DNA of 64,000 nucleotides from positions 62,001 through 126,000 of IMG/VR virus record IMGVR_UViG_3300018962_000001, one strand, 5' to 3'. A program made the translations under genes and the position numbers. Below the pieces are notes generated by a model. It worked only from the letters and a program-made list of their open reading frames with translations, did no database searches and was not told the origin of the DNA. The first letter of the stretch is position 1, and each line of letters opens with the position of its first letter. Below, one piece after another: positions 46,305-46,593 of the stretch.

Positions 46305-46593
46305 GGATGTGACGCGCTCCCATCTGTGGAGCATACATACAATGCTTTTGGAGCAGCAGGTCGGCGGTTCGACTCCGCCTCCCCCCACCATCCCGCATTG
46401 TGCGGGGTCCGGCACGCTGCACGGCGCAGAACAACGGACGGGGTGTTTTTCTGGTGTCCGGGGCGTCGTGGGCGGGTACTCCTCCAGAAATGAGAGCCTG
46501 GAGGGATGGTCGCCCACGACGCAACGGGGGGGGTATAGCTCAGGTGGCAGAGCGGCTCGTGATGAAGCTCGGCATGACTCGCGCGTCACGTTC
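46305..46593 (+). ncRNA. handle RNA 7: permuted tRNA-Gln(TTG); 3' half 46344-46390, 5' half 46529-46557
   Basis: 13-bp outer stem; halves join to a 76-nt cloverleaf with GCTGC/GCAGC AC stem. Confidence 0.75.

What the first reader, a model, noticed from the sequence alone, without database searches (positions are those of the whole stretch)
46305..46593. Permuted tRNA-Gln(TTG) with a 138-nt structured linker
Seen: 3' half 46344-46390 (ACCA) and 5' half 46529-46557 join to 76 nt with a perfect GCTGC/GCAGC AC stem and a 6/7 acceptor. A break at 28/29 is compatible with both this and the Phe element. The linker has its own 12-bp stem GCGTCGTGGGCG/CGCCCACGACGC. Inference: RNase P and 3' processing could remove the linker, leaving a nicked two-piece tRNA held by the handle even without ligation.
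Basis: partly seen in the sequence, partly recalled or inferred. Interest (0 to 1): 0.75.

Follow-up and report, generated by a model that had tools for sequence, protein, structure and literature searches.

The report
Phage Y RNA carrying permuted tRNA
The "permuted tRNA-Gln" is real in the sequence. It is one of about ten Y-RNA-like genes that follow a divergent Ro60 gene in a 205-kb phage, so it is most likely a tRNA-mimicking partner RNA of Ro60 rather than a split tRNA gene awaiting ligation.

Summary
A 13-bp terminal stem encloses a tRNA 3' part (anticodon loop UUUUGGA, T arm, acceptor strand, encoded ACCA ending at 46390). A 138-nt structured spacer follows, then a canonical tRNA 5' part (46529-46557). 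A twin with anticodon GAA lies at 46682-46905. Both sit in a conserved two-part "handle" (5' box, GCRTACAY; 3' RRACTTG), shared by about ten tandem elements at 43.8-47.6 kb.

The array starts 30 nt after an operon whose 504-aa product has the Ro60/TROVE-vWA fold (Foldseek 1yvp, E 2e-11). The same handle RNAs flank this Ro60-like family in at least 80 bacterial genomes and in other phages. Viral contigs found by the RNA motif alone mostly encode the protein nearby.

The architecture is that of YrlA-type Y RNAs, which are circularly permuted tRNA mimics. M. smegmatis YrlA is already known to be opened by RNase P and given CCA. The new features are a complete anticodon arm, an encoded CCA and a long excisable spacer.

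No expression data exist. Ro60 binding, processing and charging are all inferred. I rate this a new variant of a known kind.

The parts
46305..46317 (+). Lower handle stem, 5' strand. It pairs with 46581-46593 (13 bp: 11 Watson-Crick, 2 G-U).
   Evidence: Sequence. Present in the RNAfold MFE and centroid.
46318..46338 (+). Family box TCCCATCTG, the upper-stem 5' strand TGGAGCA, and the conserved TACAT junction motif.
   Evidence: Near-identical to element E2 (TCCCATCAG ATGGGCA TACAC) and to the bacterial consensus. It corresponds to CUAC in the Rfam YrlA consensus.
46344..46390 (+). tRNA positions 30-76: anticodon loop UUUUGGA (anticodon UUG), variable loop, T arm, acceptor 3' strand, A73 and encoded CCA.
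   Evidence: Sequence. Orphan T loop not inside any ARAGORN or Rfam tRNA.
46391..46528 (+). 138-nt spacer taking the place of the acceptor-closing loop. It has a small hairpin at 46392-46408 and a long hairpin at 46462-46523 that includes the 12-bp stem.
   Evidence: No promoter-like or terminator-like site lies inside it.
46529..46557 (+). tRNA positions 1-29: acceptor 5' strand, U8 A9, D arm, G26, and G27 C28 U29, which pair with positions 41-43.
   Evidence: Sequence. One of 2 windows in the genome that pass the structural filter.
46558..46580 (+). 3' side of the junction loop and the upper-stem 3' strand (GCTC, GCA, GA), then ACTC. ACTC is a variant of the family's ACTTG.
   Evidence: RNAfold pairs 46323-32 with 46567-77. 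Family consensus.
46581..46593 (+). Lower handle stem, 3' strand.
46682..46905 (+). Twin element E6. It has a handle, a tRNA 3' part at 46717-46766 (anticodon GAA, ACCA), a 75-nt spacer, and a 5' part at 46842-46869.
43820..46292 (+). Other handle elements of the same family.
- E1, 43820-43941.
- E2, 43962-44040 (handle only).
- E3, 44071-44196 (permuted tRNA-like; acceptor closed by a 6-nt loop).
- E8, 45508-45640 and E9, 45739-45861 (tRNA-like in normal order).
- E4, 46204-46292.
- E10 lies further on, at 47532-47600.
   Evidence: Scanner, motif list, and sequence. Weak Rfam YrlA match to E4.
39285..43789 (+). Operon just upstream of the array.
- 75-aa Ubl-like ORF ending in Gly, 39285-39512.
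- Ro60-like protein, 39512/39575-41089.
- VWA-HTH protein, 41086-41841.
- 289-aa protein of unknown function, 41845-42714.
- Prok-JAB, 42644-43108.
- ThiF/E1-like, 43130-43789.
   Evidence: Same gene order in bacteria.

Best explanation
46305-46593 is a Y-RNA-like gene of the YrlA type.

Proposed mechanism:
- Its two ends pair to form a bulged two-part stem. This is the presumed docking site for the Ro60-like protein encoded 5 kb upstream.
- Its effector module is a complete, circularly permuted tRNA, opened in the 5' strand of the anticodon stem.
- The loop that normally closes the acceptor stem of Y RNAs is replaced by an encoded ACCA plus a 138-nt spacer. The spacer resembles the inter-tRNA spacers of this array.
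- Host RNase P would cut 5' of G46529, and 3' trimming would stop at CCA (46390).
- The product would be a two-piece RNA held together by the handle, the acceptor stem and the tRNA core. It would display an intact anticodon loop and a free CCA end.
- Within the phage's tRNA, RNA-ligase and Ro60 island, such tRNA look-alikes would tether or aim the Ro60 particle at tRNA-handling factors, or act as decoys for them.

Shown: the anatomy, family membership of the handle, its genomic linkage to the Ro60-like gene, and the Ro60 fold of that protein.

Inferred: binding, processing, and any charging or decoy role.
For: 1. Handle family.
- Perfect-scoring handles in the 64-kb window occur only at 43.8-46.3 kb on the + strand.
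- 207 handle elements were found in 85 loci that encode the Ro60-like protein.
- Own-partner stems pair far better than swapped partners. The lower stem is 7/7 in 64% of cases versus 10% for swapped partners. Both stems reach >=6 pairs in 56% versus 10.6%.

2. Ro60 link.
- The AF2 model has pLDDT 87. Its 13 best PDB matches are all Ro60/Rsr/TROVE over about 520 columns (E 2e-11, TM 0.61-0.66).
- The best profile-vs-PDB hits are Ro60 9nen (E 1.3e-3) and two TROVE entries (E 9.8e-3); Rsr 2nvo reaches only E 0.35.
- ESM Atlas gives TM 0.73 to TROVE/vWA clusters.
- The MIDAS residues D321, S323, S325 and D407 are invariant.

3. Motif-first test.
- Ten viral contigs were found only by GCATACAT plus a T loop. 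Six of them encode this protein family.
- In five of those six, the gene lies within 0.3-1.8 kb on the same strand.

4. Resemblance to YrlA.
- The order is handle, (V), T arm, acceptor hairpin, D arm, handle. CUAC/TACA and AAACUUG are shared with the Rfam YrlA consensus.
- Bacterial relatives hit YrlA at E 2e-5.

5. Relatives with full anticodon arms. L123 carries UCU with TCCA plus a 4-nt loop. L138 carries CAU, L145 GUC, L167 GUU, L194 and L203 GAU, and L205 UCU.

6. Precedent. [quoted passage not shown]

7. The phage already has canonical tRNA-Gln(UUG) and tRNA-Phe(GAA), so the permuted copies are not needed for decoding.
Against: - No RNA data exist. No RNA run was listed, and the only holders are DNA runs of a biocrust metagenome.
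- The handle lacks the GNCGAAN0-1G motif of YrlA.
- Rfam YrlA scores are far below the gathering score of 69 bits. E4 scores 18 bits, E5 has no match, and bacterial relatives score 39 bits.
- Pfam TROVE does not hit the protein.
- E5's 3' box (ATGACTC) and its bulged upper stem depart from the family consensus.
- The long-spacer CCA form was seen only in this phage among about 210 loci, so it has no comparative support of its own.
- The RNAfold MFE of E5 does not form the T arm; only the centroid does.
Confidence: 0.65

Rival explanations
1. It is a true permuted tRNA gene. The handle strands are cut off at the 28/29 junction, the nick in the anticodon stem is sealed (for example by the PF09414 RNA ligase at 38507-39166), and RNase P plus 3' trimming remove the spacer. 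The product is a normal decoding tRNA-Gln(UUG).
For: - All tRNA parts are present with canonical spacing, and CCA is encoded.
- The nick would lie in duplex RNA. By general knowledge, this is the preferred substrate of Rnl2-type ligases.
- A ligase gene lies 7 kb upstream.
- Wang et al. raise this possibility for YrlA in general (bioRxiv 10.1101/312249).
Against: - There is no bulge-helix-bulge motif. The junction is a loop of roughly 10 x 9 nt that carries the family's conserved TACAY.
- The phage has no splicing endonuclease and no RtcB.
- The same handle encloses elements that can never become tRNAs (E2, E4, E10, and most bacterial members).
- Canonical tRNA-Gln(UUG) and tRNA-Phe(GAA) genes already exist.
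- The body lacks Gln-like features seen in the phage's own tRNA-Gln.
Confidence: 0.1
2. The handles are only processing stems of the polycistronic tRNA transcript, for example RNase III sites. They would have no Ro60 role, and the permuted order would be a by-product of rearrangement.
For: - The elements are interleaved with ordinary tRNA genes.
- Leader-trailer stems are common processing signals (general knowledge).
- E8 and E9 are near-normal tRNA-like bodies flanked by such stems.
Against: - The same handle occurs in bacteria beside the Ro60-like gene, where there is no tRNA array.
- The motif-first search recovers the Ro60-like gene.
- Sequence boxes within the internal loop are conserved across phyla, which a mere double-stranded cleavage site would not need.
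Confidence: 0.12
3. The elements are decayed tRNA pseudogenes or a chance juxtaposition of tRNA fragments in a recombining tRNA array.
For: Phage tRNA arrays contain degenerate copies. The window holds other odd tRNA-like stretches, for example 46011-46116 at 26.8 bits.
Against: - Two independent elements share the same order, matching acceptor strands, encoded ACCA, and 13-bp and 10-bp terminal stems.
- The expectation for a matching 5' part within 200 nt is about 1e-3 for each element.
Confidence: 0.05

Closest known systems
YrlA-type bacterial Y RNAs (Rfam RF02553; Chen et al. 2014, PMC4201824; Wang et al. 2018, bioRxiv 10.1101/312249)
   Same: - The 5' and 3' ends form a long bulged stem.
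- The module between them is a circularly permuted tRNA mimic (T arm, acceptor hairpin, D arm).
- The genes lie in tandem beside a Ro60 gene, in phages as well as bacteria.
- M. smegmatis YrlA has a 7-bp acceptor stem, is opened by RNase P and gains CCA. This yields two pieces that stay in the RNP.
   Different: [quoted passage not shown] This element has a 7-nt anticodon loop, an encoded ACCA and a 138-nt spacer.
- The handle enters at 28/29 of the anticodon stem rather than replacing that stem.
- It has no GNCGAA motif.
- It scores below the Rfam gathering score.
- The partner protein is a divergent Ro60 without a Pfam TROVE hit, in an operon with Ubl-like, JAB and E1-like genes.
Thermus phage phiLo Ro60 with Yrl1 and Yrl2 (PMC12135203; PDB 9kop, 9l5y)
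   Same: The phage encodes Ro60 plus adjacent Y-like RNAs. The phiLo protein is among the structural matches of the window's protein.
   Different: The phiLo Yrls are stem-bulge-stem RNAs with a CGAA motif, and no complete tRNA body is described for them. This phage has about ten elements, two of them full permuted tRNAs.
Circularly permuted tRNA genes of Cyanidioschyzon merolae and some green algae and archaea (Soma et al. 2007, as cited)
   Same: The 3' half lies upstream of the 5' half on one transcript. The termini pair next to the anticodon region. The acceptor end is opened by RNase P/Z.
   Different: Those genes use a bulge-helix-bulge motif, the splicing endonuclease, and ligation through a circular intermediate. 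None of these is present here (sequence).
Two-piece tmRNA from permuted ssrA genes (Rfam RF04321)
   Same: It is a bacterial gene in which the acceptor 3' piece with CCA precedes an excised intervening segment and the 5' piece. The mature RNA is two base-paired chains.
   Different: This element has no tag reading frame, no pseudoknots and no G3.U70. ARAGORN finds no tmRNA. The RF04321 match is only 13 bits, E 1.2.

Membership tests
YrlA / Y RNA | Encoded next to a Ro60 (TROVE-vWA) gene. | tested here: met
   The array begins 30 nt after the operon that holds a protein with the Ro60 fold. The finding itself lies 5.2 kb downstream on the same strand. The linkage is reproduced in bacteria and other phages.
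YrlA / Y RNA | The 5' and 3' ends pair into a long stem with an internal loop or bulge. | tested here: met
   A 13-bp lower stem, a loop and an upper stem appear in RNAfold. The stems covary across the family.
YrlA / Y RNA | GNCGAAN0-1G motif in the 5' strand (the presumed Rsr contact). | tested here: not met
   The motif is absent from all handle 5' strands. Its five occurrences in 43800-47620 lie elsewhere. The family has its own box (CCYNRAY ... GCNTACA) and a 3' ACUUG.
YrlA / Y RNA | Permuted tRNA-like module in the order T arm, acceptor stem, D arm. | tested here: met
   Sequence. The Rfam YrlA core matches relatives at E 2e-5.
YrlA / Y RNA | Reaches the Rfam RF02553 gathering score (69 bits). 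| tested here: not met
   E5 has no match. The neighbouring E4 scores 18 bits and bacterial relatives 24-39 bits.
YrlA / Y RNA | Bound by Ro60/Rsr. | not testable with these tools
Permuted tRNA gene (C. merolae type) | 3' half upstream of the 5' half, with all tRNA parts present. | tested here: met
Permuted tRNA gene (C. merolae type) | Bulge-helix-bulge motif at the paired termini, plus a splicing endonuclease. | tested here: not met
   The junction strands (TACATACAAT and CGTGATGAA) are not complementary. There is no PF01974 match in the phage.
Permuted tRNA gene (C. merolae type) | Ligated circular intermediate and a mature one-piece tRNA. | not testable with these tools
   No RNA run was listed.
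Split tRNA (Nanoarchaeum type) | The halves are transcribed separately. | tested here: not met
   There is no promoter-like or terminator-like site in the spacer 46391-46528. This is a consensus scan only.
Two-piece tmRNA | Tag reading frame and alanine identity (G3.U70). | tested here: not met
   ARAGORN finds no tmRNA. The pair at 3-70 is G-C.
Ro60 / TROVE protein (the partner) | HEAT-repeat ring plus a vWA domain with MIDAS. | tested here: met
   Foldseek full-length matches to 1yvp, 9nen, 2nvo and 9l5y. DxSxS, T and D are invariant. The Pfam TROVE HMM is negative.

The most novel reading that the evidence does not exclude
After RNase P and 3' trimming, the two-piece RNAs E5 and E6 may be genuine aminoacyl acceptors. 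E6 carries the main PheRS determinants, GAA and A73. This would give a Ro60-type particle that carries a charged tRNA. Alternatively, the handle may be removed and the nick sealed to give an ordinary tRNA. Either outcome would be the first case of a Y RNA that is also a working tRNA. It would also be the first natural permuted tRNA maturation pathway in a bacterial virus.
Probability: 0.15. Interest if true: 0.9.

Novelty: new variant of a known kind. Interest (0 to 1): 0.6.

Why it matters
What the tRNA-like module of bacterial Y RNAs is for remains an open question. Published YrlAs lack both an anticodon loop and a free CCA end.

This phage, and a few bacterial relatives, show Y-like RNAs that keep a canonical anticodon loop. 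In the phage they also carry an encoded CCA followed by an excisable spacer. That makes two questions directly testable:
- Can a Y RNA be opened and charged?
- Is it recognised through its anticodon by synthetases, modification enzymes or anticodon nucleases?

The work also exposes a large Ro60-like family (at least 578 genomes, no Pfam TROVE hit). The family has its own Y-RNA handle and sits in an operon with Ubl-like, JAB and E1-like genes.

Tried and rejected
- ARAGORN on joined halves: not discriminating. It-15% of constructs with a shuffled 5' part, so I replaced it with an explicit structural filter.
- Close relatives of the phage: none. GenBank phages match only a tRNA-Pro. The search with the whole Ro60-like ORF found no viral relative. 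Loci found through the RNA ligase lack the handle.
- Pfam TROVE and RtcB in the phage: absent. Single-sequence phmmer against PDB gave only spurious hits. The ligase has no PDB sequence match.
- Known ribozymes or other Rfam families in 43.5-49 kb: nothing beyond tRNA, a weak YrlA match and spurious miRNA hairpin matches.
- RNA evidence: only DNA runs of a biocrust metagenome hold the sequence, and no RNA run was listed.
- Complex prediction on the Ro60-like protein plus E2: not folded by the tool, so it is no evidence either way.
- My first motif-only covariation test had register errors in the lower stem. I redid it with a best-register procedure applied equally to the controls.
- A regex search for other CCA-bearing permuted forms first failed through lazy matching. 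I redid it anchored on the T arm.
- Literature: I found no paper in the library that links TROVE/Ro60 with Ubl, JAB and E1 operons. I found none describing permuted tRNAs in phages.

Full report
**Setting.** The window is bases 62001-126000 of a 204,685-bp IMG/VR virus record rated 100% complete. The record was assembled from a biocrust metagenome. ARAGORN finds 36 tRNA genes on the + strand between 37.6 and 60.4 kb, and 31 of them reach the Rfam tRNA gathering score. The finding lies inside this array, between tRNA-Pro(tgg) at 46123-46197 and tRNA-Pro(ggg) at 46604-46680.

**The observation.**
- 46344-46390 holds positions 30-76 of a tRNA. These are the loop UUUUGGA, the 3' strand GCAGC, a 5-nt variable loop, the T arm GGCGG/UUCGACU/CCGCC, the acceptor strand UCCCCCC, A73 and CCA.
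- 46529-46557 holds positions 1-29. These are GGGGGUA, U8 A9, the D arm GCUC/AGGUGGCA/GAGC, G26 and GCU.
- Between them lies a 138-nt spacer with a 62-nt hairpin that contains the quoted 12-bp stem.
- The acceptor stem has 6 of 7 pairs (U6.C67 mismatch). The composite anticodon stem has 5 of 5.
- A second element of the same build, with anticodon GAA, lies at 46682-46905. Its 3' part is 46717-46766, its spacer is 75 nt, and its 5' part is 46842-46869.

**Is it chance?**
- ARAGORN calls the joined halves tRNA-Gln and tRNA-Phe. It also-15% of constructs whose 5' part was shuffled, so that test is worthless here.
- An explicit filter is informative. It requires acceptor >=6/7, U8, a 4-bp D stem and GG in the D loop.
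- It passes 7 of 409,290 genome windows for the Gln 3' part and 8 for the Phe 3' part. Adding continuation of the anticodon stem leaves 2 and 1, and the true partners are among them.
- A matching 5' part within 200 nt downstream is therefore expected about once in a thousand, and it happens twice.
- RNAfold gives z = -4.4 for 46305-46593, with the 13-bp terminal stem and the spacer hairpin in both MFE and centroid.
- Imposing the cloverleaf costs 8.2 kcal/mol out of 143.9.
- For the Phe twin, the unconstrained MFE is the complete permuted cloverleaf inside the terminal stem.

**The handle is a family.**
- The motif GCRTACA just upstream of both 3' parts recurs eight times on the + strand between 43.8 and 46.7 kb.
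- Each copy follows a stem strand whose partner lies downstream, before a box RRACTTG and a second stem. This makes a two-part stem with an internal loop.
- A scanner for this architecture gives perfect scores only in that cluster within the window.
- With the sequence read by eye, there are about ten elements:
  - E1, 43820-43941.
  - E2, 43962-44040 (handle only).
  - E3, 44071-44196 (same permuted order as the finding, but the acceptor stem is closed by a 6-nt loop).
  - E8, 45508-45640 and E9, 45739-45861 (tRNA-like bodies in normal order).
  - E4, 46204-46292 (T arm plus hairpin).
  - E5, the finding.
  - E6, the Phe twin.
  - E10, 47532-47600.
- A possible 5' strand at 44440 (E7) was not resolved.

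**Resemblance to Y RNAs.**
- Rfam's YrlA model gives a weak match to E4. Its consensus shows the same CUAC after the 5' stem and AAACUUGnCGCC in the 3' strand.
- Chen et al. 2014 describe YrlA as a stem formed by the two ends that encloses a V region, a T arm, an acceptor-like hairpin and a D arm. This is a circularly permuted tRNA mimic encoded beside Ro60 in more than 250 bacteria and in phages.
- M. smegmatis YrlA has a 7-bp acceptor stem. It is cut by RNase P and receives CCA, and both halves co-purify with Rsr (PMC4201824).

**The partner protein.**
- Pfam TROVE and RtcB are absent from the phage.
- The ORF 39512-41089 has no Pfam hit, and its probable start is at residue 22. ESM Atlas places it next to TROVE/Ro60-vWA clusters (feature score 0.94-0.97, structural TM up to 0.73).
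- A profile of 27 homologues has Ro60 and TROVE entries as its best PDB hits (9nen, E 1.3e-3; two TROVE entries, E 9.8e-3); Rsr 2nvo reaches only E 0.35.
- The AlphaFold model has pLDDT 87 and pTM 0.84. Its 13 best Foldseek matches in the PDB are all Ro60, Rsr or phage Ro60, over about 520 columns (E 2e-11 to 2e-8, TM 0.57-0.66).
- The vWA MIDAS residues are invariant.
- The family is large. More than 900 proteins were scored, and at least 578 of 185,579 species genomes carry it. These are mostly Chloroflexota, Planctomycetota, Cyanobacteriota and Abditibacteriota.

**Genomic linkage.**
- In bacteria the gene sits in a conserved operon: a 64-76-aa ORF, the Ro60-like gene, a gene of about 300 aa, Prok-JAB and ThiF.
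- The phage has the same cassette at 39285-43789, plus an extra VWA-HTH gene. A promoter-like site follows at 43786-43813, and then E1.
- The bacterial loci carry the same handle RNAs on the same strand. I found 207 elements in 85 loci. Of these, 131 have a T arm and 81 have a 7-bp acceptor hairpin.
- I detected elements by sequence boxes alone and compared each 5' strand with its own 3' strand and with another element's. The lower stem is perfect in 64% versus 10% of cases. Both stems reach 6 of 7 pairs in 56% versus 10.6%.
- A reverse test used viral contigs retrieved only by the pattern GCATACAT-N-GGTTCGANTCC whose hit is not an ordinary tRNA. Of ten such contigs, six encode the Ro60-like family. 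In five of them the gene lies 0.3-1.8 kb from the RNA on the same strand. Three of the four negatives are fragments 11-43% complete. None has a Pfam TROVE hit.

**Where the finding sits within the family.**
- About fourteen of the bacterial elements with acceptor hairpins also keep an anticodon arm with a canonical 7-nt loop. The anticodons include UCU, CAU, GUC, GUU and GAU.
- In 7 of 8 independent cases, the two bases after position 26 on the D-arm side pair Watson-Crick with positions 42-43, while the contiguous strand does so in 2 of 8.
- The tRNA body is therefore opened at 28/29 and the handle is inserted there.
- CCA directly after the acceptor strand is rare. It occurs in L123 (UCCA plus a 4-nt loop), L126 (ACCA plus 1 nt), L161 and the phage.
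- The form with CCA, a long spacer and a complete 5' part was found only in the phage's two elements among all loci held.
- Both spacers begin with a small hairpin right after CCA and end with a hairpin before G1. Ordinary tRNA spacers of this array look the same.

**Mechanism.** I propose the following, all of it inferred.
1. The RNA is transcribed with its neighbours.
2. The ends pair to form the handle.
3. The Ro60-like protein binds the handle.
4. RNase P cuts before G46529.
5. 3' trimming stops at the encoded CCA.

The result would be a two-piece Y RNA that displays an anticodon loop and a CCA end.

The surroundings suggest a role in tRNA surveillance, repair or decoying. They include 36 tRNAs, a PF09414 RNA ligase at 38507-39166 (E 1e-25) and the Ro60 cassette. 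Iyer et al. describe this theme for jumbo phages (PMC7824862). Phage phiLo Ro60 with its Yrl RNAs assembles with host PNPase (PMC12135203).

Decoding is not needed from these elements, because canonical tRNA-Gln(UUG) and tRNA-Phe(GAA) genes exist. The E5 body does not resemble the phage's tRNA-Gln.

**Rivals.**
- Maturation into an ordinary tRNA by cleavage of the handle and ligation is not excluded. However, there is no bulge-helix-bulge motif, no splicing endonuclease and no RtcB. The same handle also encloses RNAs that cannot become tRNAs.
- A pure processing-stem role does not explain the bacterial loci or the conserved loop boxes.
- Pseudogene debris does not explain two matched elements.

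**Novelty.**
- Known: Y RNAs as permuted tRNA mimics, their presence in phages, and RNase P opening of one of them.
- Published YrlAs are stated to lack the anticodon loop and a free CCA end. Wang et al. only speculate that some might be processed to resemble canonical tRNAs (bioRxiv 10.1101/312249).
- A 2026 survey of bacterial tRNA mimics likewise describes families that have lost the anticodon arm.
- New here: the anticodon-bearing form with CCA and spacer, the family-specific handle, and the divergent Ro60 in a Ubl/JAB/E1 operon. I found no paper on these in the library.

**Limits.** There is no transcript evidence, no binding test and no close relative of the phage.

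Noticed in passing
window 39285-43789; L123, L125, L126: There is a conserved operon: a small ORF ending ...VRPEAVFG (75 aa in the phage, 76 aa in L125), the Ro60-like protein, a protein of about 300 aa with unknown function, Prok-JAB, and ThiF/E1-like. It looks like a ubiquitin-like conjugation set joined to a Ro60 particle. I found no paper in the library linking TROVE/Ro60 with Ubl, JAB and E1.
   Followed up: partly
window 41086-41841: An extra VWA plus helix-turn-helix gene is inserted in the phage cassette between the Ro60-like gene and the 289-aa gene. It is absent from the three bacterial operons I inspected.
   Followed up: no
window 44071-44196 (E3): This is a permuted tRNA-like Y element with a closed acceptor stem. 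Its anticodon-like loop CTTTAAC would present UUA, the complement of the UAA stop codon.
   Followed up: no
window 43840-43910, 45538-45612, 45765-45836: Three ARAGORN 'tRNAs' (Ser tga, Arg tct, Gly tcc) lie inside Y-type handles (E1, E8, E9). They have shortened or replaced acceptor stems. The third is not called by Rfam at all. They are probably Y-RNA modules, so the phage's true tRNA count is lower than 36.
   Followed up: partly
window 46011-46116: A tRNA-like stretch (Rfam tRNA 26.8 bits, below the gathering score) has a perfect 7-bp acceptor stem and T arm but a long insert of about 40 nt. It is not explained.
   Followed up: no
window 43786-43813 and 44268-44296: These are the only two strong sigma-70-like sites in 43.4-47.4 kb (11 of 12 consensus matches each). 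The first ends 6 nt before the 5' end of E1's handle.
   Followed up: no
window 44541-44674: A hairpin of about 134 nt (arms CACGAGTGG...GTCTGTCCTGATCA and TGATCAGGGCAGAC...CCACTCGTG) lies between Y-like elements. It only gives spurious miRNA matches in Rfam.
   Followed up: no
L009-L122 (IMG/VR contigs): More than 50 viral contigs carry a 75-77-nt tRNA-Leu-like gene with a short variable loop and a D region reading GATGGAAYTGGCATACAT. This shares GCATACAT with the Y-handle junction motif. A further class of orphan T-arm elements (…GTGAAA…GTAGGCATACAT…GAGGTGGGTTCGA) occurs in at least 12 contigs. In the one contig of this class that I tested (L015), no Ro60-like gene was found.
   Followed up: partly
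L127-L131: Other large phages (up to 390 kb) carry 2-13 tandem handle elements beside the Ro60-like gene. L131 has at least 11. Arrays of Y-like RNAs therefore seem to be a recurrent jumbo-phage feature.
   Followed up: partly
window 32920-34383: This ORF has a WGR domain plus weak matches to ATP-dependent DNA ligase domains. It lies upstream of the RNA ligase and Ro60 island.
   Followed up: no
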